A stretch of 64,000 nt of DNA, from positions 1 through 64,000 of IMG/VR virus record IMGVR_UViG_3300044591_002232; one strand, 5' to 3'. Shown in pieces: positions 20,737 to 34,037 of this stretch (position 1 is its first letter; the number at the start of each line of letters is the position of its first letter). The notes beneath the pieces are model-generated. The model saw nothing but the letters and a program-made list of their open reading frames with translations, was not told the origin of the DNA and did no database searches. The position numbers and the translations under genes are program-made.

Positions 20737-21330
20737 ATGTATGTAACTTTAAGGGAGGCAAGAAAACAACTAGGACTTCATCCAAATACCCTTAGAAAGT
20801 ATGCCGATGAGGGGATTATTGAAACAATAAAAACTCCATCTGGACAACGAAGATTCAATGTTGAATCTTTTATAAAACAAAAACAAAATAGTTTACAAAC
20901 AATTCTTTACTGCAGAGTTTCAAGTGCTAGACAAAAAGACGACCTCCAAAATCAAAAAAATTATCTCATCTCAAAGTACCCAGGAGCAGAGGTTATTATT
21001 GATGTCGGCTCTGGACTCAATTTTAAACGAAGAGGTTTGCGTTCCATTTTGGAACGATTATTGCAGGGAGATTCAATCCAACTTGTGGTTGCCCAGCGTG
21101 ACCGACTTTGCAGATTCGGATTTGACCTCATTGAATATCTCGTCGTTAAAAACGGTGGAGAAATCGTGGTTCTCGATCAAATCGAGCACAGTCCAGAAGG
21201 AGAACTTGTATCCGACATCCTTTCTATCATCCATGTTTTCTCTTGTAGAATACATGGGATGCGAAAGTATAAAAATCAAATCAAAGAAGATAAGGATTTA
21301 CCCAAACCAAACTCAAAGACAAATCCTTAG
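20737..21330 (+). CDS. tnpA: IS607 transposase (MerR-like HTH + serine recombinase)
   Basis: YVTLREARKQLGLHPNTLRKY HTH; YCRVSS catalytic Ser; DVGSGLNFKR. Confidence 0.95.
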   Translation: MYVTLREARKQLGLHPNTLRKYADEGIIETIKTPSGQRRFNVESFIKQKQNSLQTILYCRVSSARQKDDLQNQKNYLISKYPGAEVIIDVGSGLNFKRRGLRSILERLLQGDSIQLVVAQRDRLCRFGFDLIEYLVVKNGGEIVVLDQIEHSPEGELVSDILSIIHVFSCRIHGMRKYKNQIKEDKDLPKPNSKTNP

Positions 21331-22411
21331 ACAATGGTTTGGTGCATCAAGATACACTTATAATGAAACCGTTAAGTTTTTAAAAGAACCAGATACTAAG
21401 GCATCTTGGAAATCAATAAAAACTGGTTTGATTCATTCTTTACCCGATTGGGCGGAAGAAATTCCTTATCAAATTAAATCTGTTGCCGTAAGAGATTGCT
21501 GTAAGGCAGTTTCTATGTGTAAACGAAAAAATAGAGGAATTCCACCAGAAGATTGGCATGAAGTTAAATTTAGAAGCAGACGTGAACCAAAACAAACAAT
21601 TTACGTTCCTAAGACTTCTATATCTAAAAATGGTGTTTATCACACTATTTTAGGGAAATTAAAAATGAGTGAAATGCTTCCCGACAACATTATGGATTCA
21701 AGATTAACATTAGATAATGGTAGATACTTTTTAATAATTCCTTACGAAGAAAAAACAATTCCATGTGAGAACCAAGCAAGAGTTGTTTCTTTAGATCCAG
21801 GAGTTAGAATATTCCAGACATTTTATAACCCAGAATTTTCCGGGGCTATTGGTGATGGCGACATTGGTAGAATAACCAGATTATGTTATCATCTTGATTC
21901 TCTAATCTCAAAACGAGATAAGTCTAAGTCTAGAAAAAAATATAGACTCAATAAGGCTATCAAACGAATGAGAAATAAAATCAAAGATTTGGTCGATGAA
22001 ATTCATCATAAGACTGCAAGGTTTTTGGTTGATAATTTTGATATTATTCTTCTTCCTTCATTTGATGTAAGTCAAATGGTTAAAAAGGGTAAGAGAAAAA
22101 TCAACTCTAAAACGACCAGATCTATGTTGACATGGGCTCATTATAGATTTAAGTGTTTTCTTAAAGACAAATGTGAAGAATTTAATAAGGTTCTTCTTAT
22201 TGTTAATGAGGCCTATACATCAAAAACAGTGTCTTGGAATGGAAAAATTAATTACTCTTTAGGTGGATCTAAAGTTGTTAAAGACAAAAACCATTGTGTC
22301 CCTAGAGATATTAATGGAGCCCGAAATATTTGGGTAAAAAGCGTCTCAAGAATTCTTGAGGCTTTGGGAGATAGCCCCTCAAGTAGCAATACTTGTGCAT
22401 TGTTAACGTAA
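21002..22411 (+). CDS. tnpB: IS607 TnpB with Fanzor-like rearranged RuvC (start uncertain: GTG 20924 or ATG 21002)
   Basis: SLDPG (RuvC-I), ILLP in place of the canonical Glu, NEAYTSKT (relocated Glu), RDINGARNI (RuvC-III); Zn-finger cysteines absent. Confidence 0.85.
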   Translation: MSALDSILNEEVCVPFWNDYCREIQSNLWLPSVTDFADSDLTSLNISSLKTVEKSWFSIKSSTVQKENLYPTSFLSSMFSLVEYMGCESIKIKSKKIRIYPNQTQRQILRQWFGASRYTYNETVKFLKEPDTKASWKSIKTGLIHSLPDWAEEIPYQIKSVAVRDCCKAVSMCKRKNRGIPPEDWHEVKFRSRREPKQTIYVPKTSISKNGVYHTILGKLKMSEMLPDNIMDSRLTLDNGRYFLIIPYEEKTIPCENQARVVSLDPGVRIFQTFYNPEFSGAIGDGDIGRITRLCYHLDSLISKRDKSKSRKKYRLNKAIKRMRNKIKDLVDEIHHKTARFLVDNFDIILLPSFDVSQMVKKGKRKINSKTTRSMLTWAHYRFKCFLKDKCEEFNKVLLIVNEAYTSKTVSWNGKINYSLGGSKVVKDKNHCVPRDINGARNIWVKSVSRILEALGDSPSSSNTCALLT

Positions 22412-22730: not shown

Positions 22731-23385
22731 ATTCAAAGAGAAAGATAAAACGAAGACTATCCTATGAGGTCTCTTTTTGGTATAATGGAAATAGAGAAAC
22801 AAAATATTTTCATTCGGCCAAGAAAATGAGGACCTATGTTAATGGTATTCACGAAATTACTGAAGTTGATTTCCCAACTGTGATCATTGAAAAAACTTGG
22901 TGTTATCGAAACCACCACCCAAAACATAAATGGTGGTACGAATCCACTGAACCTAATCAATTCATTTGTTATGAGAAATATTAGGACACCTGACCAACCG
23001 TCCACTCTGCCTTGTGGTGGAGTGGACTTTGACTTACAATAACGAAGTAAACCACCGAACTCCTTATGAATAGTTTGAACTATTATCTTTACAGATTGAG
23101 ATTGACTATTGATGGGTGGAAGTATTGGATGACCACTCCTTATGAAGATTTGCAAAAAATTACGAGTCCATATAATCCAGATGAACTATACTGGAGTGTC
23201 CGTAAAAGTGGACATACAATTGCCGCAAACTTTTGGTATATGGTAAATGATGGTTATTATGATATGATTGATGAATGGGAGGATTTATGAGTTGTATAAA
23301 GCAGGACACTTGACCAACCGTCCACTCTGTCTTGTGGTGGGGTGGACTTTGCCTTATAATGCCCTTGTAACCCACCGAATTCCTT

Positions 23386-26112: not shown

Positions 26113-26384
26113 TTATGAAAGTAAAAGCCTTGATTGAAGAACTCCAAGAGTATCCAGCGGATATGGAAGTTCTTATTGATTATGGGTCTCAAATTTATGA
26201 TGGAGAAATCATAGTAAAAGGAAAAGATTTATACCATTGTAATTGTACTTCAAAATTGCAGAGTAATTTTGATTTTTACTCTGAATATGATGAACCTTGT
26301 GTTTATAAGGATGAGGTTGATGGTAAAATAGTAGTGATGAAAGTTCCAACCGAAAAGAAAAAGTTTATTGTTTTAGATTGTTGA
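26109..26384 (+). CDS. Hypothetical protein
   Basis: MKVKALIEELQEYPADMEV small-phage-protein start. Confidence 0.7.
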   Translation: MIMKVKALIEELQEYPADMEVLIDYGSQIYDGEIIVKGKDLYHCNCTSKLQSNFDFYSEYDEPCVYKDEVDGKIVVMKVPTEKKKFIVLDC

Positions 26385-26386
26385 TT

Positions 26387-26500
26387 TTGATTTAAAAACT
26401 CCAAAGGAGTTCTCTTAACCTCACGGTTAAAAATTCCTGCTTCAACGCTTACGCCTTCAGCAAATTCGCTTCGGGTCTTATCTCTGCTCCACAGGCAAAC
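26387..26500 (-). ncRNA. Probable TnpB omegaRNA scaffold / element right end
   Basis: Minus strand reads TTGAAGCAGGAA...CCGTGAGG...AACTCCTTTGGAGTT hairpin, then TCAA, as in IS605 right ends. Confidence 0.55.
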
Positions 26501-27582
26501 CCTGCCAATCCGACAGTTAAAATATTTTTTGCCGCATTAATGTCTCTATCGTGAACTGCTCCACAATCATGACAAGTCCATTCACGGACACTTAACGGCA
26601 TAGAAGATTGAATAGAACCACAAGAACTACAAGTTTTACTTGAAGGGAAAAATCTATCAACTTTCAATAGAGTTCTCCCATACCAGTCGCACTTATATTT
26701 TAATAAAAAAATAAATTGCGACCAAGAAACTTCAGCAATTGCTCTTGCTAATTTGTGGTTTTTCAACATACCAGACACATTTAAGTCCTCAACCACTATC
26801 GTTTGATTCTCACGAACAAGTTGAGTGCTTATTTTGTGATGATAATCTAATCTTGTATCTACAATCTTTTGATGTAGTTTAGCAACTTTAACTCTTGCTT
26901 TCTCACGATTTTTAGAACCTTTCTGCTTTTTATATAATCTTTGATTGAGGATTTTTAATCTTTTTTGGACTTTTCTTAACCACTTTGGATTGGTAATTTT
27001 ATCACCGTTAGAAGTAGCAAAGAAACAATCAATACCTAAATCAAGACCTATCACTTTATCTGTTGGTTCAAGTTGTTTGATTTCTTCTTGACACAACATA
27101 CTAATCATCCATCTTCCGCTTGGTTCAAGTGTGATGGTTATAGTAGAAGGATAAGAAGGGATTTGACGAGACCAACGAATATTCAAGGGTTCTTTTGATT
27201 TTGCTATATAAATCTTACCTTCTTTATACTTAAAGGCAGATTTAGTTAATTCACAAGAGTTTCTGTTTTTTCTCTTCTTAAATCTTGGATATTTACTTTT
27301 CTTTTGGAAAAAGTTTTTAAATCCAGTTTGTAGATGTTGAAGAGATTGTTGTAGAGGAACACAAGAAACTTCATTTAACCATTCATACTCTTCTTTTTTC
27401 TTGAGTTCCGTCAAAAGAGCACTTGTTTGATTGTATCCTACAGAGTTTTTATTTTGATGCCATTCTTTGGTTCTATAATCAAGAAAATGATTATAGACCA
27501 CACGGCAACAACCAAGAGTTTTTCTTAAAAGAACCTCTTGACTTTCTGTAGGATAAAATCTAAACTTGTATGCTCTATACAT
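26449..27582 (-). CDS. tnpB: IS200/IS605-type TnpB RNA-guided nuclease, no adjacent tnpA
   Basis: RAYKFRFYP, GLDLG, VVEDL, CSSCG/CHDCG, DRDINAAKNI; all three RuvC acidic residues present. Confidence 0.95.
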   Translation of the reverse strand: MYRAYKFRFYPTESQEVLLRKTLGCCRVVYNHFLDYRTKEWHQNKNSVGYNQTSALLTELKKKEEYEWLNEVSCVPLQQSLQHLQTGFKNFFQKKSKYPRFKKRKNRNSCELTKSAFKYKEGKIYIAKSKEPLNIRWSRQIPSYPSTITITLEPSGRWMISMLCQEEIKQLEPTDKVIGLDLGIDCFFATSNGDKITNPKWLRKVQKRLKILNQRLYKKQKGSKNREKARVKVAKLHQKIVDTRLDYHHKISTQLVRENQTIVVEDLNVSGMLKNHKLARAIAEVSWSQFIFLLKYKCDWYGRTLLKVDRFFPSSKTCSSCGSIQSSMPLSVREWTCHDCGAVHDRDINAAKNILTVGLAGFACGAEIRPEANLLKA

Positions 27583-27609
27583 TTATGAGTTGTATGTTTA
27601 ACTCATAAG

Positions 27610-27617
27610 TATTTATA
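27610..27617 (-). promoter_or_regulatory. Late promoter TATAAATA for tnpB (26449..27582), followed by a hairpin abutting the ATG
   Basis: Minus strand: TATAAATA-c-TTATGAGTT-aaacatac-AACTCATAA-ATG. Confidence 0.7.
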
Positions 27618-27727
27618 AAAGTTTAACCTTTTCTTAACCTAATTTAGGACACTTTACGAACTGGAACAGGAGCACTTGAAATCCGGTGCCTTTTGTAGTA
27701 TAATGACCTTACAAACAAAGAACCAAA

Positions 27728-28111
27728 ATGACTAACCAAGCAAATTGTAATCATCGCACACCACCAAAACATCACGTTGATTATTTGGATGAAAGAATGG
27801 TAATTGTGAATGGAGTATCTTATACCAAAAAAGAACCAACCCCAATAGTTATTCAAAAAGACGAAAACACCATTGTTGTTGGTGGGGTGGAGTATCAAAA
27901 GGTGCAGCAGGCCCTCACAATCTATGAATTTCTTATTCAATGTGAATATGGAGAACTAAATCCCCCTTATATTGATAAAAAAATTGAAATTGAAACTAAT
28001 GCAGAAAACTTCTTAAATTATCTTTATGAATATTGTGATGTAATTGAAGAAGATGATGATAAACTTGTTGTGAGTATTTCTAAACAACAAATGGTGATGC
28101 CCAATGACTAA
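27728..28111 (+). CDS. Hypothetical protein
   Basis: Follows an operator cassette; shares a VGGVEY/IGGVKY motif with 28104..28364. Confidence 0.7.
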   Translation: MTNQANCNHRTPPKHHVDYLDERMVIVNGVSYTKKEPTPIVIQKDENTIVVGGVEYQKVQQALTIYEFLIQCEYGELNPPYIDKKIEIETNAENFLNYLYEYCDVIEEDDDKLVVSISKQQMVMPND

Positions 28112-29676: not shown

Positions 29677-30876
29677 CTATTGATTTTCTAGACGCTTCAA
29701 CGCAGACGCTAAATGATGTTGGACACCATTTAGACTTACTTCCGCTCCACGTCCGTAATCGACATACTCTGCCGATGTTAATTCTTGACCCGAAAGGTCT
29801 AACCACCCTTTTTTAAGGATGTTGATAGAGGCATTTAAGTCTCTATCGCGATGAGAGCCACAAGAAGGACAAGTCCATTCACGAACACTTAAAGGCATCT
29901 TGTCTTCTTTATGTCCACAGTTAGAACAGGTCTTGGAACTAGGGTAAAACCTATCTATTTTGGTCAAAGTTTTTCCGTACCAGTTACACTTGTACTCCAA
30001 CATAGAAACAAAAGTAGACCAAGAGGCATCACTAATGGATTTTGCAAGTTTGTGGTTCTTTAACATTCCAGAAACATTTAAGTCTTCAACAACAATCAAA
30101 TCAAATGTCTTAACAAGTTCTGTTGAAATATTATGCAAGAAATAATTTCTTGAGTTAGTAATGTTTTCGTGTACTTTAGCAACTTTAATACGTTGTCTAT
30201 TGTAACGATTACTACCTTTCTTTTTACGACTTAAATGTTTCTGTGCTTTTTTAAGTTTAGATTGGTTCTTTCTAAACCATCTTGGGTTATTGATGACTTG
30301 ACCATTTGATAAAGTCATTAGTTCTTTTAAACCCAAATCAATACCTACTACTTTACCAGTAGAGGGTATTGGATTGAGTTCTTGTTGGACTAAAATTGAA
30401 ACAAAATACTTTCCGGTTGGAGTTTTAGAAACAGTAATGCTTCTAAAATCGGCTTCTTCAGGGATATTTCGGTCCAGAACAATTTTGACCCAACCAATTT
30501 TTTCGATCCTTATTGAACATTTTTCTTGATCAAGTTTAAATCTAGTTTTTTCTGGAAGCCTAAATGATTGTCTATTGGTCTTTTTCTTGAATTTCGGCTT
30601 TCCAAGTTTAACCTTCCTTTTTTTGTTAAAGTATTGTTTCTTAAACTCAACAAAATCCATTCTTTTTTGTTGAAGTGTTGATGCCGATACTTCTTTAAGG
30701 AACTCAAACTCCTCTTGGTCTTTTAGTGTTTTTTCATTTACTATGGTACCATCATTATTGTTAAAATTTTCAACTAACTTATTCCAAACAAAACGAACAC
30801 AACCAAAAGTTTTAGCAAATAAAACCTCTTGTTCTTTTGTAGGATAAATCCTATATTTGTATGCTTTTAAATGCAT
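29677..30876 (-). CDS. tnpB: IS200/IS605-type TnpB, no adjacent tnpA
   Basis: KAYKYRIYP, GIDLG, VVEDL, CSNCG/CPSCG, DRDLNASINI; RuvC triad intact. Confidence 0.95.
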   Translation of the reverse strand: MHLKAYKYRIYPTKEQEVLFAKTFGCVRFVWNKLVENFNNNDGTIVNEKTLKDQEEFEFLKEVSASTLQQKRMDFVEFKKQYFNKKRKVKLGKPKFKKKTNRQSFRLPEKTRFKLDQEKCSIRIEKIGWVKIVLDRNIPEEADFRSITVSKTPTGKYFVSILVQQELNPIPSTGKVVGIDLGLKELMTLSNGQVINNPRWFRKNQSKLKKAQKHLSRKKKGSNRYNRQRIKVAKVHENITNSRNYFLHNISTELVKTFDLIVVEDLNVSGMLKNHKLAKSISDASWSTFVSMLEYKCNWYGKTLTKIDRFYPSSKTCSNCGHKEDKMPLSVREWTCPSCGSHRDRDLNASINILKKGWLDLSGQELTSAEYVDYGRGAEVSLNGVQHHLASALKRLENQ

Positions 30877-30882
30877 GTCACT

Positions 30883-30983
30883 TTAATTGGGTCGTTATAT
30901 CTATTTAGTAAATTTTATTTTTAGGGAGAGATTTATTCTCTCCCGCTTGAAAAGAACGACCCAATCAAGCACTTTTATTTAGT
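30883..30983 (-). promoter_or_regulatory. Twin late-promoter boxes and nested hairpins upstream of tnpB
   Basis: ACTAAATA at 30976-30983 and 30902-30909; 14-nt inverted repeat 30883-30896/30955-30968 enclosing a GGGAGAGA/TCTCTCCC hairpin. Confidence 0.7.
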
Positions 30984-31174
30984 AAAGTTTTTATTGGAAA
31001 TTTATTGATTTTATGCATTTTTGTATTTATACCCATATTTTTCTCAAGATGTAAAAAAATTGCCCAGGCATCCGGGGTTTTAGAGACCCTCAAGGACACC
31101 TGATCAACTGGCACAATTACCCATAAACACCCCCACTAATCCCCTAAACTACAATTGCCTTAAACAAAACACCC

Positions 31175-33234: not shown

Positions 33235-34037
33235 GACACCTAATCAACTGTCCACTCTGCCTTGTGGTGGAGTGGATTTTGCCTTATGATACACTCATAA
33301 ACACAGGAGACCTTATGGAAACACTTTGGGACACAATACATAGAGACCTTACGAGAATGGGGGCTCTCTCTGAATATAAAGTTGATAGTATAGAACTTGC
33401 AAACCATTTAGAACAACTTTATGATAATATTGAAGAACTTAAAATTCAAATTTCTCAACTAAAAGAAGAACTTAAAAGTGAAATCCGTCAATTGAAAGAT
33501 GAATGAAATGAAAATGCTTAAAGAAGCACAAGCAGTTGCAGATGCTATTGAAGAAGTGAGATTTGACTGGGGTAATATGGAACAATCTCATCCTCACATT
33601 ATTGCCGTTGCTGCTCTTCGTAAAGTTGTAGAAGAACTCAAGTATATTGGTATTACTGAAAAGAACATTCTTGAAATTGCGAATACACTGGAGGAGTTGA
33701 AATGATTGACGTTTCACAGCTGACTGAAGAGCAACTTAACGAACTTGAACTTCAAATTCAAAAACATAAAGAACAGCAAAAAATAAATAATGCTTTAGAA
33801 AATTTAAAAGGTTATAAAGTAACTTTTTATGTGAGGTTTGACCCTGAAAAGCATAAGAATGATATGCTTACGAGTGATGGAGAACTTGATACGGGATTTT
33901 TTACTGATTACCTGTGTGATAATGTCGTTACAGACCTGATTGAAGATTTTCAATTGTATGATTACGAGGACGTCAGTTATCCTAATGTGGAGATGGCAAC
34001 AAAACAAGAAATTGAAGAGAAATTTTGAGGAACTGAA

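What the first reader, a model, noticed from the sequence alone, without database searches (positions are those of the whole stretch)
26387..27620. Solo TnpB no. 1 wired like a phage homing endonuclease
Seen: intact RuvC triad, no tnpA, antisense to the early genes, with TATAAATA followed by a perfect 9-bp hairpin (TTATGAGTT/AACTCATAA) ending at the ATG. Established: T4 homing endonucleases such as I-TevI use late promoters plus RBS-sequestering hairpins. Inference: expression is timed to late infection, when recombination can copy the element into cut alleles. The hairpin could instead be the IS left-end hairpin.
Basis: partly seen in the sequence, partly recalled or inferred. Interest (0 to 1): 0.6.

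Follow-up and report, generated by a model that had tools for sequence, protein, structure and literature searches.

The report
Phage TnpB nuclease behind a late promoter
A T4-like lake phage carries an intact, transposase-less TnpB (RNA-guided nuclease) cassette whose conserved left edge is a T4-type late promoter plus a start-codon hairpin, the same control logic that phage homing endonucleases use, which suggests TnpB elements have adapted to spread between co-infecting phages.

Summary
Window 26449-27582 (-) encodes a 377-aa TnpB with intact RuvC triad (D181/E265/D347) and zinc finger. No Y1 tnpA exists anywhere in the 249.8-kb genome. On the minus strand, TATAAATA (27617-27610), one base, and a perfect 9-bp hairpin (27608-27583) abut the ATG.

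The genome is a T4-like jumbo phage from lake water with a gp55-type late sigma factor. Its late boxes ([C/A]TAAATA) are strongly enriched before structural genes. All three canonical TnpB genes have such a box 22-27 nt before the ATG (P about 0.001).

Six copies of this element from metagenomes (dS 0.3-0.7, dN/dS 0.05-0.09) keep the hairpin stems invariant while the loop varies. Their conserved block begins at the box and ends at GGTTAAG(A), window 26414/13, not 26387.

The predicted late start, G27604, lies inside the 5' arm, as with I-TevI. The neighbouring TnpB2 shows this design more clearly: a covarying long-range stem with the late box inside its loop.

The hairpin has no counterpart at the right end, which argues against an IS end hairpin.

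Not shown: transcription timing, the TAM, an empty site, or homing. I rate it a new variant of a known kind.

The parts
26449..27582 (-). tnpB1 ORF, 377 aa. RuvC triad D181/E265/D347; zinc finger C318, C321, C337, C340.
   Evidence: Pfam architecture; alignment to ISDra2 TnpB structures; residue positions; dN/dS 0.05-0.09 among six copies.
27610..27617 (-). T4-type late promoter box TATAAATA, 27 nt before the ATG. It is the left edge of the block conserved among copies.
   Evidence: Sequence. The box is kept in the copies: TATAAATA x4, CATAAATA, and TATATATA at a contig end. [C/A]TAAATA is enriched before genes. gp55 is present. It is the only late box on this strand in the unit, and there is no sigma-70-like site on this strand.
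27583..27608 (-). Perfect 9-bp hairpin (TTATGAGTT / AACTCATAA, 8-nt loop) ending at the base before the ATG. The predicted late start G27604 lies in its 5' arm.
   Evidence: Fold -8.6 kcal/mol, z -3.4; an RNA starting at 27604 keeps only 5 bp. Stems are invariant in 6 of 6 copies, with four different loops. The box spans -13 to -6 in T4 (PMC2988020).
26413..26560 (-). omegaRNA-like structured 3' region overlapping the end of tnpB1. Its terminal hairpin is TTAACC-GTGA-GGTTAA, and the conserved right end is at G26414/A26413.
   Evidence: Homology among four right-flank contexts stops here. Consensus fold has 4 compensatory pairs. Sub-threshold RAGATH-18 hit at 26434-26495 (E 0.22). The motif resembles the right end of cyanobacterial relatives.
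26390..26412 (-). Right flank and predicted guide template. It is also a terminator-like hairpin (AACTCC TTT GGAGTT + T run) on the tnpB strand.
   Evidence: Sequence. Shared with L043/L051 with a compensatory C>T/G>A change. L044 and L045 have unrelated sequence here.
27618..27655 (-). Left flank. It is shared only with the closest copies and holds a 9-nt copy (27640-27632) of the right-end sequence AGGTTAAGA.
   Evidence: Contigs in runs X10, X15 and X20 diverge at 27643-27655. L051 and L052 differ immediately upstream of the box.
27676..27704 (+). Divergent sigma-70-like promoter (TTGAAA-17-TATAAT) of the neighbouring + strand gene 27728-28111. Context only, not part of the element.
29677..31031 (-). 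TnpB2 cassette (399 aa, 48% identical to TnpB1). Distal TATAAATA at 31031, proximal ACTAAATA at 30909 (25 nt before the ATG). A long-range stem encloses the proximal box and reaches the start region.
   Evidence: Folds -35.2, -36.5 and -41.3 kcal/mol (z -5.4, -5.4, -4.5) in three copies with different arm sequences.

Best explanation
TnpB1 is a working, TnpA-less IS200/IS605-derived cassette of about 1.2 kb (26413/14 to 27617). It lives in the plastic small-gene region of a T4-like lake phage.

Shown:
- An intact nuclease gene under strong purifying selection.
- A structured omegaRNA-like right end.
- A conserved left edge made of a T4-type late box and a hairpin abutting the ATG.
- A gp55 late sigma factor in the genome.
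- Late boxes before all three TnpBs.
- The same unit in several flanking contexts, and absent from a close relative.

Inferred mechanism:
1. gp55-RNA polymerase starts at about G27604, late in infection.
2. That RNA lacks the first four bases of the 5' arm, so the start codon is open.
3. Any RNA reading in from upstream forms the full 9-bp hairpin and is poorly translated. This is the logic of I-TevI, mobE and segB.
4. The same transcript runs through the omegaRNA and ends at the flank hairpin. It gives a guide copied from the right flank (from 26413/12 downwards).
5. The TnpB-omegaRNA complex then cuts co-infecting relatives that have TAM plus that flank but no insert. T4-type recombination copies the cassette in: TnpA-independent, 'non-restorative' homing or marker exclusion.

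About the TAM: it must be the last bases before the left end, and the only conserved bases there are those of the box. So the box probably overlaps the TAM/left-end junction.
For: - Identity and integrity.
- No tnpA.
- T4-like phage with late machinery.
- Late-box enrichment: NCTAAATA 31 of 61 and NATAAATA 19 of 80 lie 5-60 nt before same-strand starts, against a 4% background.
- 3 of 3 TnpBs have a box, P 0.0014.
- Six copies: the conserved block starts at the box and ends at GGTTAAG(A); stems are invariant while the loop varies.
- Synonymous divergence is 0.29-0.68 with dN/dS 0.05-0.09. So 18 invariant non-coding stem positions are not neutral.
- Fold statistics and the truncated late RNA.
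- TnpB2 keeps a long-range stem by compensatory change, with the late box in the loop.
- Among gene-proximal boxes, an immediately adjacent perfect hairpin of 8 bp or more occurs only at TnpB1, at the ORF splitting nrdA, and at an 81-aa ORF. All three are exact TATAAATA.
- Published precedent for TATAAATA plus hairpin before homing endonuclease genes: PMC2988022, PMC2677866.
- Mobility: close relative L031/L040 (87-98% nt identity) lacks TnpB1. There are three unrelated right flanks. A contig in run X10 carries 26384-27655 with 6 differences and unlike DNA on both sides.
- TnpB homing, and the idea of non-restorative homing into co-infecting phages, are in the literature.
Against: - No transcript data: no RNA run holds the locus. 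The start site is extrapolated from T4.
- The phage's own structural promoters prefer CTAAATA. TATAAATA is not over-represented genome-wide.
- No Shine-Dalgarno sequence is sequestered, and the stem is only 9 bp.
- The stems show no covariation, only invariance. So a DNA-level or protein-binding role cannot be told apart from an RNA role.
- The gene is antisense to its neighbours, so it is unclear how much read-through RNA exists to be gated.
- No clean empty site and no TAM were found.
- The predicted guide is itself a hairpin, which might hinder targeting.
- The three right-flank contexts with a similar left flank are not what simple homing predicts.
Confidence: 0.55

Rival explanations
1. 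The hairpin is the IS200/IS605 left-end hairpin, read as single-stranded DNA by a Y1 TnpA supplied in trans by the host. The TATAAATA is incidental AT-rich sequence. The element moves by ordinary peel-and-paste transposition.
For: The element derives from IS200/IS605, whose ends carry subterminal hairpins. The stems are conserved in sequence, not by covariation, as expected for a protein-recognised hairpin. No RBS is sequestered. The cassette occurs in several contexts.
Against: There is no hairpin of like sequence at the right end, where the terminal hairpin is TTAACC-GTGA-GGTTAA. Cellular relatives (57-60% identical) and Microcystis phage MaMV-DL02 have a matched LE/RE hairpin pair of a different sequence. 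It sits about 75 nt before the ATG, with a TATAAT next to the start, and no hairpin at the ATG. There is no tnpA in the phage. The box is conserved with the hairpin, and all three TnpBs have late boxes.
Confidence: 0.12
2. The late box belongs to the target, not to the element. This TnpB lineage has a TAM that coincides with (part of) the late box. Copies therefore always land just behind late-promoter-like sequences and are late-expressed as a by-product. In an intermediate form, the box is a composite of TAM (YAT) and left end (AAATA).
For: A TAM must directly precede the left end. The only conserved bases at the left edge of six TnpB1 copies and three TnpB2 copies are those of the box. The five bases ending in AT are TTTAT, TGTAT (x3) and CTCAT, and relatives have TTCAT/ATCAT before their left end.
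Against: Without the insert, a minus-strand late promoter at this site would face only a terminator and antisense early genes, so it would have no evident use. No empty site was recovered to test this. TnpB3's box (GCTAAATA) does not fit YAT.
Confidence: 0.2
3. TnpB1 is kept for a phage function other than its own spread. It could be an RNA-guided weapon against competing phages or host DNA, or a regulator. The late promoter then only reflects ordinary late-gene wiring.
For: Strong purifying selection. Four TnpB-like genes sit in one genome. Phage TnpBs are widespread: 438 phage records match. Marker exclusion is a known benefit of phage endonucleases.
Against: The predicted guide has no other close match in the genome (best 3 mismatches in 16). 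Guides differ between copies according to their flank, as expected for a self-propagating element rather than a fixed target. The catalytic triad is intact, so it is not a dead-nuclease regulator.
Confidence: 0.1
4. The promoter-like box and hairpin are chance features of an AT-rich leader on a passenger gene that is decaying.
For: TATAAATA is under-represented genome-wide. Hairpins of 7 bp or more follow 4% of boxes, against 3% of random sites.
Against: Conservation of box and stems across dS 0.3-0.7, dN/dS below 0.1, 3 of 3 TnpBs with boxes, and the covarying TnpB2 leader.
Confidence: 0.03

Closest known systems
ISDra2-type TnpB / omegaRNA (IS200/IS605 OrfB, RNA-guided nuclease; PDB 8BF8, 8EXA, 8H1J)
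   Same: Same domain architecture. Alignable over residues 3-360 (E 2.9e-74). Same RuvC DED triad and zinc finger. A structured RNA region overlaps the 3' end of the gene and ends at the element boundary.
   Different: No TnpA partner in the genome. The right-end RNA is shorter than in cyanobacterial relatives. The left end is only about 35 nt and consists of a phage late box plus a hairpin, instead of a TnpA-binding hairpin. The TAM is unknown.
T4-family homing endonuclease genes with late promoter and inhibitory hairpin (I-TevI, I-TevII, I-TevIII, segB, Aeh1 mobE; endonucleases of 'fractured genes')
   Same: A TATAAATA box directly before a hairpin that touches the translation start. The predicted late start lies inside the structure. 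Insertion in a T4-like genome with presence/absence among relatives. The same module sits in this genome before the ORF splitting nrdA.
   Different: The nuclease is RNA-guided (TnpB), not GIY-YIG or HNH. No Shine-Dalgarno sequence is sequestered in TnpB1. The gene is antisense to its neighbours rather than embedded in a read-through operon. Timing and homing are not shown.
IS200 left end (tnpA translation blocked by a stem-loop over the RBS; own knowledge, Beuzon et al. 1999)
   Same: A family member whose left end uses an RNA hairpin at the start of the first gene to keep expression low.
   Different: There the gated gene is tnpA and the promoter is a weak host-type one. Here it is tnpB behind a phage late box.
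Cyanobacterial TnpB elements and Microcystis phage MaMV-DL02 ORF 59L (nearest named relatives, 57-60% identity)
   Same: Same TnpB clade, with a related right-end motif (GAAGCAG.AA ... GTGAGG).
   Different: They keep matched LE/RE hairpins and a TATAAT next to the start. They have no late box and no hairpin at the ATG.
RAGATH-18 reRNA of IS607 TnpBs (RF03064; PMC11061315)
   Same: A weak match (25.4 bits, E 0.22) across the tnpB1 stop, at the place where a guide RNA scaffold is expected.
   Different: Below the gathering score of 44.9. The protein is nearer to ISDra2 TnpB than to ISFba1 (E 2.9e-74 against 1.4e-40). Not a member.

Membership tests
TnpB (IS200/IS605 OrfB RNA-guided nuclease) | HTH_OrfB_IS605 + OrfB_IS605 (RuvC) + zinc-ribbon TNB domain architecture | tested here: met
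   Pfam E 1.7e-19, 2e-28 and 1e-25, all above the curated cut-offs.
TnpB (IS200/IS605 OrfB RNA-guided nuclease) | RuvC catalytic triad D-E-D and CxxC...CxxC | tested here: met
   D181/E265/D347 align with ISDra2 D191/E278/D361. C318, C321, C337 and C340 are present.
TnpB (IS200/IS605 OrfB RNA-guided nuclease) | omegaRNA scaffold overlapping the 3' end of the gene, ending at the right end, with the guide taken from the flank | tested here: inconclusive
   Conserved fold with 4 compensatory pairs in 4 sequences. Homology stops at GGTTAAG(A) with three unrelated flanks. Only a sub-threshold Rfam hit. No RNA data.
TnpB (IS200/IS605 OrfB RNA-guided nuclease) | Defined TAM directly 5' of the left end | tested here: inconclusive
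   No empty site was found. The bases at the left edge are TTTAT, TGTAT and CTCAT, overlapping the box.
Autonomous IS200/IS605 insertion sequence | Y1 transposase gene tnpA | tested here: not met
   No PF01797 match at E up to 1 in six frames of the whole genome. The control genomes do give matches.
Autonomous IS200/IS605 insertion sequence | Matched subterminal hairpins at left and right ends | tested here: not met
   The left hairpin TTATGAGTT/AACTCATAA has no like at the right end (TTAACC/GGTTAA). Relatives do have matched pairs.
T4-type late gene | TATAAATA-type box about one helical turn before the start, and no -35 element | tested here: met
   Exact consensus 27 nt before the ATG. No sigma-70-like site on that strand. 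Box definition from PMC2988020.
T4-type late gene | Phage encodes gp55 late sigma and the gp45 clamp, and boxes mark its late genes | tested here: met
   phrog_234 E 1.4e-54 and phrog_223 E 4.5e-76. Boxes lie before the sheath, portal, scaffold and other structural genes.
T4-type late gene | Transcript 5' end at the box, appearing late in infection | not testable with these tools
   No RNA run holds the stretch.
Free-standing phage homing endonuclease (functional class) | Late promoter with a hairpin over the translation start that the late RNA escapes | tested here: met
   The geometry is met by sequence and fold for TnpB1. It is met with covariation for TnpB2. Function is inferred.
Free-standing phage homing endonuclease (functional class) | Presence/absence among close relatives at a syntenic place | tested here: inconclusive
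   Relative L031/L040 lacks TnpB1, but has 3 kb of other genes there instead of a clean empty site.
Free-standing phage homing endonuclease (functional class) | Cleavage of the insert-free allele and biased inheritance in mixed infection | not testable with these tools
   Needs an isolate or a reconstituted assay.

The most novel reading that the evidence does not exclude
In T4-like phages, TnpB elements have shed TnpA and become RNA-guided free-standing homing endonuclease cassettes. Their left end is (or completes, together with the TAM) a gp55 late promoter, followed by a structure that lets only the late transcript be translated. This would be convergent with protein-only homing endonucleases. 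The single late transcript would deliver both nuclease and guide, and the guide's 3' end would be set by a flank terminator. If so, this locus is a natural case of TnpA-independent, phage-to-phage 'non-restorative' homing, and the late box may be built at the insertion junction (YAT|AAATA).
Probability: 0.35. Interest if true: 0.8.

Novelty: new variant of a known kind. Interest (0 to 1): 0.66.

Why it matters
TnpB genes are common in phage genomes: 438 records in the phage collection match this one. They are usually annotated as 'transposase' and left at that.

TnpB is known to act as an RNA-guided homing nuclease that restores excised transposons in bacteria. Spread into co-infecting phages without TnpA has only been proposed.

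This locus gives sequence-level evidence that a TnpB lineage has taken on the regulatory grammar of T4 homing endonucleases. The evidence is a late box and a start-occluding structure, conserved across diverged copies, and in the sister element kept by compensatory change.

That makes the idea directly testable. It offers compact, naturally TnpA-free nuclease-guide units with a defined promoter. It also bears on how RNA-guided nucleases move between viruses. A search of the held library for 'TnpB' with 'late promoter' found no paper describing this.

Tried and rejected
- **Near-identity DNA search of the phage collection:** no match.
- **Empty site for TnpB1:** the 91-aa left neighbour has no relatives in viral contigs. 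The right-flank pattern has no match. The close relative L031/L040 has other genes in place of the cassette. Laid contigs gave no joint that skips the cassette.
- **Empty site for TnpB2:** L036 and L042 carry the right flank but not the left flank next to it.
- **Hairpin pattern in viral contigs:** none. In metagenome contigs: two more copies.
- **Expression data:** only DNA runs from lake water hold the stretch, so timing could not be tested.
- **RAGATH-18 membership:** rejected, because the hit is sub-threshold and the protein is nearer to ISDra2 than to IS607-type TnpB.
- **Consensus folding of the TnpB2 leader on a MAFFT alignment:** it missed the long-range stem because the arms are misaligned. 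Single-sequence folds recovered it in all three copies.
- **'Hairpins follow late boxes in general':** rejected, 6 of 141 boxes against a 3% background.
- **Cyanophage host from a photosystem gene:** no psbA-type match. The host stays unknown. Only the cyanobacterial affinity of the TnpB points that way.
- **16-nt identity between the TnpB1 and GIY-YIG promoter regions:** seen (E 0.007) but not conserved in other TnpB1 copies, so given little weight.
- **A malformed PHROG call** returned an error and no data.
Full report
**1. What is there**

The window is the first 64 kb of a 249,820-bp virus record with terminal repeats and 37% G+C.

The ORF at 26449-27582 on the minus strand gives a 377-aa protein with the full TnpB architecture: HTH_OrfB_IS605, OrfB_IS605 and Cas12f1-like_TNB. 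It aligns over residues 3-360 with the solved ISDra2 TnpB (E 2.9e-74). The catalytic D191/E278/D361 of that enzyme fall on D181, E265 and D347 here, and both CxxC pairs are present.

A six-frame search of the whole genome with the Y1 transposase model found nothing, while control genomes did give matches.

Read on the minus strand, the leader is as follows:
- TATAAATA at 27617-27610
- C at 27609
- TTATGAGTT at 27608-27600
- an 8-nt loop at 27599-27592
- AACTCATAA at 27591-27583
- ATG at 27582

**2. What kind of phage, and is TATAAATA a promoter in it**

PHROG scans give T4-type parts:
- head closure protein, large terminase, sheath, portal, scaffold and major head protein
- UvsW-like helicase and gp46
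- a gp55-type late sigma factor at 145953-146615 (E 1.4e-54), with gp45 clamp, gp44/62 clamp loader and RegA

So the machinery that reads T4 late promoters is encoded.

Upstream of the structural genes the recurrent box is (T/A)CTAAATA. The counts of boxes lying 5-60 nt before a same-strand start are:

| Box | Near a start | Share |
|---|---|---|
| NCTAAATA | 31 of 61 | 51% |
| NATAAATA | 19 of 80 | 24% |
| NTTAAATA and NGTAAATA | 8 of 151 | 5% |
| Positional background | n/a | 4% |

The exact T4 consensus TATAAATA is rare: 25 copies, fewer than composition predicts. Five of them sit 21-41 nt before a start.

All three canonical TnpB genes of the genome have a box 22-27 nt before their ATG:
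- TnpB1, TATAAATA
- TnpB2 at 29677-30876 (-), ACTAAATA
- TnpB3 at 72856-74064 (+), GCTAAATA

Only 42 of 370 called genes have a box at 15-40 nt, which gives P = 0.0014 for three of three. No sigma-70-like site lies on the tnpB1 strand in 26200-27800.

In T4 the box occupies -13 to -6 (PMC2988020). This puts the predicted late start at G27604, inside the 5' arm of the hairpin.

**3. Conservation and boundaries**

The protein search found three copies at 90-95% identity on short metagenome contigs. A pattern scan found two more.

In the six-way alignment:
- The conserved block begins at the box. It reads TATAAATA in four copies, CATAAATA in one, and TATATATA at the very end of one contig.
- The sequence just upstream differs. 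It is unrelated in L052, and L051 has an indel there.
- The 18 stem positions are invariant in all six copies, while the loop has four versions, one of them different at every position.

Among the five lineages, synonymous divergence in the gene is 0.29-0.68 and dN/dS is 0.05-0.09. So the nuclease is under strong purifying selection, and the invariance of the stems is not neutral.

At the other end, homology among four contexts stops after GGTTAAG(A), window 26414/26413. Beyond that point:
- The window and L043/L051 share a terminator-like hairpin, with one compensatory change.
- L044 and L045 have unrelated DNA.

The last 150 nt fold into a conserved structure with four compensatory pairs, ending in a TTAACC-GTGA-GGTTAA hairpin. 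The only Rfam signal is a sub-threshold RAGATH-18 match across the stop codon. That family is the guide scaffold of IS607-type TnpBs (PMC11061315). I take the match as a hint of an omegaRNA-like element, not as membership.

**4. Mobility**

- A close relative (IMGVR_UViG_3300035126_001036; flanking genes 87-98% identical in DNA) lacks TnpB1 but has TnpB2 at 95% identity. In place of TnpB1 it has about 3 kb of other small genes, so it is not a clean empty site.
- Laying contigs of four lake-water runs shows a 3.1-kb contig (run X10) that carries 26384-27655 with six differences and unlike DNA on both sides. Contigs in runs X15 and X20 diverge at 27643.

The cassette therefore sits in several contexts in nature. 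No joint that skips it was seen.

**5. Is the hairpin an IS end?**

The nearest cellular relatives are all cyanobacterial (57-60% identity).

In a Planktothrix copy and in Microcystis phage MaMV-DL02, the left end carries a hairpin of the CCGTCG...CGACGG kind about 75 nt before the ATG. The right end has a matching hairpin, and a TATAAT sits next to the start. That is the classical IS605 layout.

TnpB1 has none of it. Its left hairpin has no counterpart at the right end.

**6. The homing-endonuclease comparison**

The review of T4 mobile elements (PMC2988022) states two points:
- For I-TevI, the inhibitory structure forms only on transcripts from upstream promoters.
- The late promoter is placed so that late RNA lacks part of the structure. 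The same holds for I-TevII, I-TevIII, segB and Aeh1 mobE.

The predicted TnpB1 late RNA keeps only 5 of the 9 pairs: -4.4 kcal/mol in total, against -8.6 for the full hairpin (z -3.4).

TnpB2 shows the design much more clearly. Its features are:
- A 12-18-bp long-range stem reaches to within a base or two of the AUG.
- The stem encloses an inner hairpin and the proximal late box.
- Free energies are -35.2, -36.5 and -41.3 kcal/mol in three copies (z -5.4, -5.4, -4.5).
- The arm sequences differ but stay complementary.
- In one copy the proximal box reads TATAAATA instead of ACTAAATA.
- An RNA starting after the proximal box folds at only -2.9 kcal/mol.

Within this genome, a gene-proximal box directly followed by a perfect hairpin of 8 bp or more occurs at three places: TnpB1, the ORF at 168078, and an 81-aa ORF at 184801. 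All three are exact TATAAATA. None of the CTAAATA structural promoters has one.

The ORF at 168078 lies between pieces of a ribonucleotide reductase large subunit that carry HINT/intein segments. This is the 'fractured gene' layout, in which TATAAATA-containing hairpins before the intervening endonuclease genes were described (PMC2677866). A GIY-YIG endonuclease gene at 176963 also has TATAAATA 26 nt upstream.

So 'wired like a phage homing endonuclease' is a fair description, tested against real examples in the same genome.

**7. Mechanism, and what is inferred**

Shown:
- gene integrity and selection
- absence of tnpA
- late machinery and late boxes
- conserved box and hairpin at the left edge
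- a structured right end
- several flanking contexts

Inferred:
- late start at about 27604
- translational gating by the hairpin
- one transcript giving both TnpB and a guide copied from 26413/12 downwards and ended by the flank hairpin
- cutting of insert-free relatives, and copying by recombination

A further inference concerns the TAM. It has to be the last bases before the left end, and the only conserved bases there belong to the box. The five bases ending in AT read TTTAT, TGTAT three times, and CTCAT. Relatives have TTCAT or ATCAT before their left ends. The box may therefore overlap the TAM/left-end junction, or even lie in the target. This could not be tested without an empty site.

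**8. Weak points**

- There are no RNA data.
- No Shine-Dalgarno sequence lies in the hairpin.
- The gene is antisense to its neighbours, so the amount of read-through RNA to be gated is unknown.
- 'Early' for the neighbours rests on small same-strand ORFs and a few strong sigma-70-like sites.
- The predicted guide is self-complementary.
- Three unrelated right flanks beside a similar left flank do not fit simple homing.
- The host is unknown: no photosystem gene was found, and the samples are lake water.

**9. Novelty**

TnpB as a homing nuclease that restores excised transposons is known. Spread into co-infecting phages or plasmids without TnpA has been discussed as 'non-restorative homing'. 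A cyanophage tnpB induced on infection has been reported. A library search for TnpB together with 'late promoter' gave no paper on this arrangement.

I rate it a new variant of a known kind, with interest 0.66.

Noticed in passing
window 29677-31031 (-): TnpB2 cassette. Its conserved block also starts at a TATAAATA (31031). The proximal late box lies inside a covarying long-range stem that reaches the start codon. A terminator-like hairpin (31076-31063) lies just upstream.
   Followed up: yes
G000 72856-74064 (+) (L003/L005) and window 20924-22411 (+): There is a third canonical TnpB (402 aa, GCTAAATA 22 nt upstream, no strong leader structure). There is also a distant 495-aa TnpB-like protein with an N-terminal extension of about 115 aa and a sub-cut-off RuvC match, on the same strand as its neighbours.
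   Followed up: partly
G000 166064-172347 (L010 2064-8347): The ribonucleotide reductase large subunit is in pieces that carry HINT/intein segments. Two related ORFs of unknown family (phrog_5104; 168078-169073 and 171271-172347) lie between or after the pieces, each behind a late box. This looks like the 'fractured gene' arrangement with free-standing endonucleases.
   Followed up: partly
G000 176963-177736 (L010 12963-13736): A GIY-YIG homing endonuclease gene with TATAAATA 26 nt upstream. Sixteen bases around its box are identical to the TnpB1 promoter region (27625-27610).
   Followed up: partly
window 27640-27632 and 26421-26413 (-): The 9-nt sequence AGGTTAAGA that ends the right end is repeated 15 nt upstream of the late box, in the window and in L045 but not in L051 or L052. 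It could be a remnant of an older right end or a junction repeat. Unexplained.
   Followed up: partly
window 23000-23027, 23320-23347, 33250-33277 (+): Three copies of a 12-bp-stem hairpin (GTCCACTCTG.. / ..GGAGTGGAC) followed by TTTG in the small-gene region. They may be repeated intergenic stem-loop cassettes like those known to shuffle genes in T4-type phages.
   Followed up: no
G000 184771-185046 (L011 771-1046): An 81-aa ORF (phrog_8074, unknown function) lies behind TATAAATA that is directly followed by a perfect 9-bp hairpin and a T run. It is the third instance of the box-plus-hairpin module.
   Followed up: no
L045 (logan SRR8164857 contig) 1530-1660: This 90%-identical TnpB1 copy has a different C-terminal tail (390 aa) and a diverged upstream part of the omegaRNA region. 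It keeps the terminal motifs, which makes it useful for defining the RNA scaffold.
   Followed up: partly
G000 95402-116335, 214243-221922, 236642-248765: Several giant ORFs (2808, 2577, 2559, 2029 and 1709 aa) in a T4-like genome. Not examined.
   Followed up: no
L022, L023, L025, L026 (IMG/VR contigs): Other phage TnpB genes (34-54% identical) also have ATAAATA 2-25 nt before their ATG. This hints that late-box-driven TnpBs are more widespread. It was not controlled for AT-richness or phage type.
   Followed up: no
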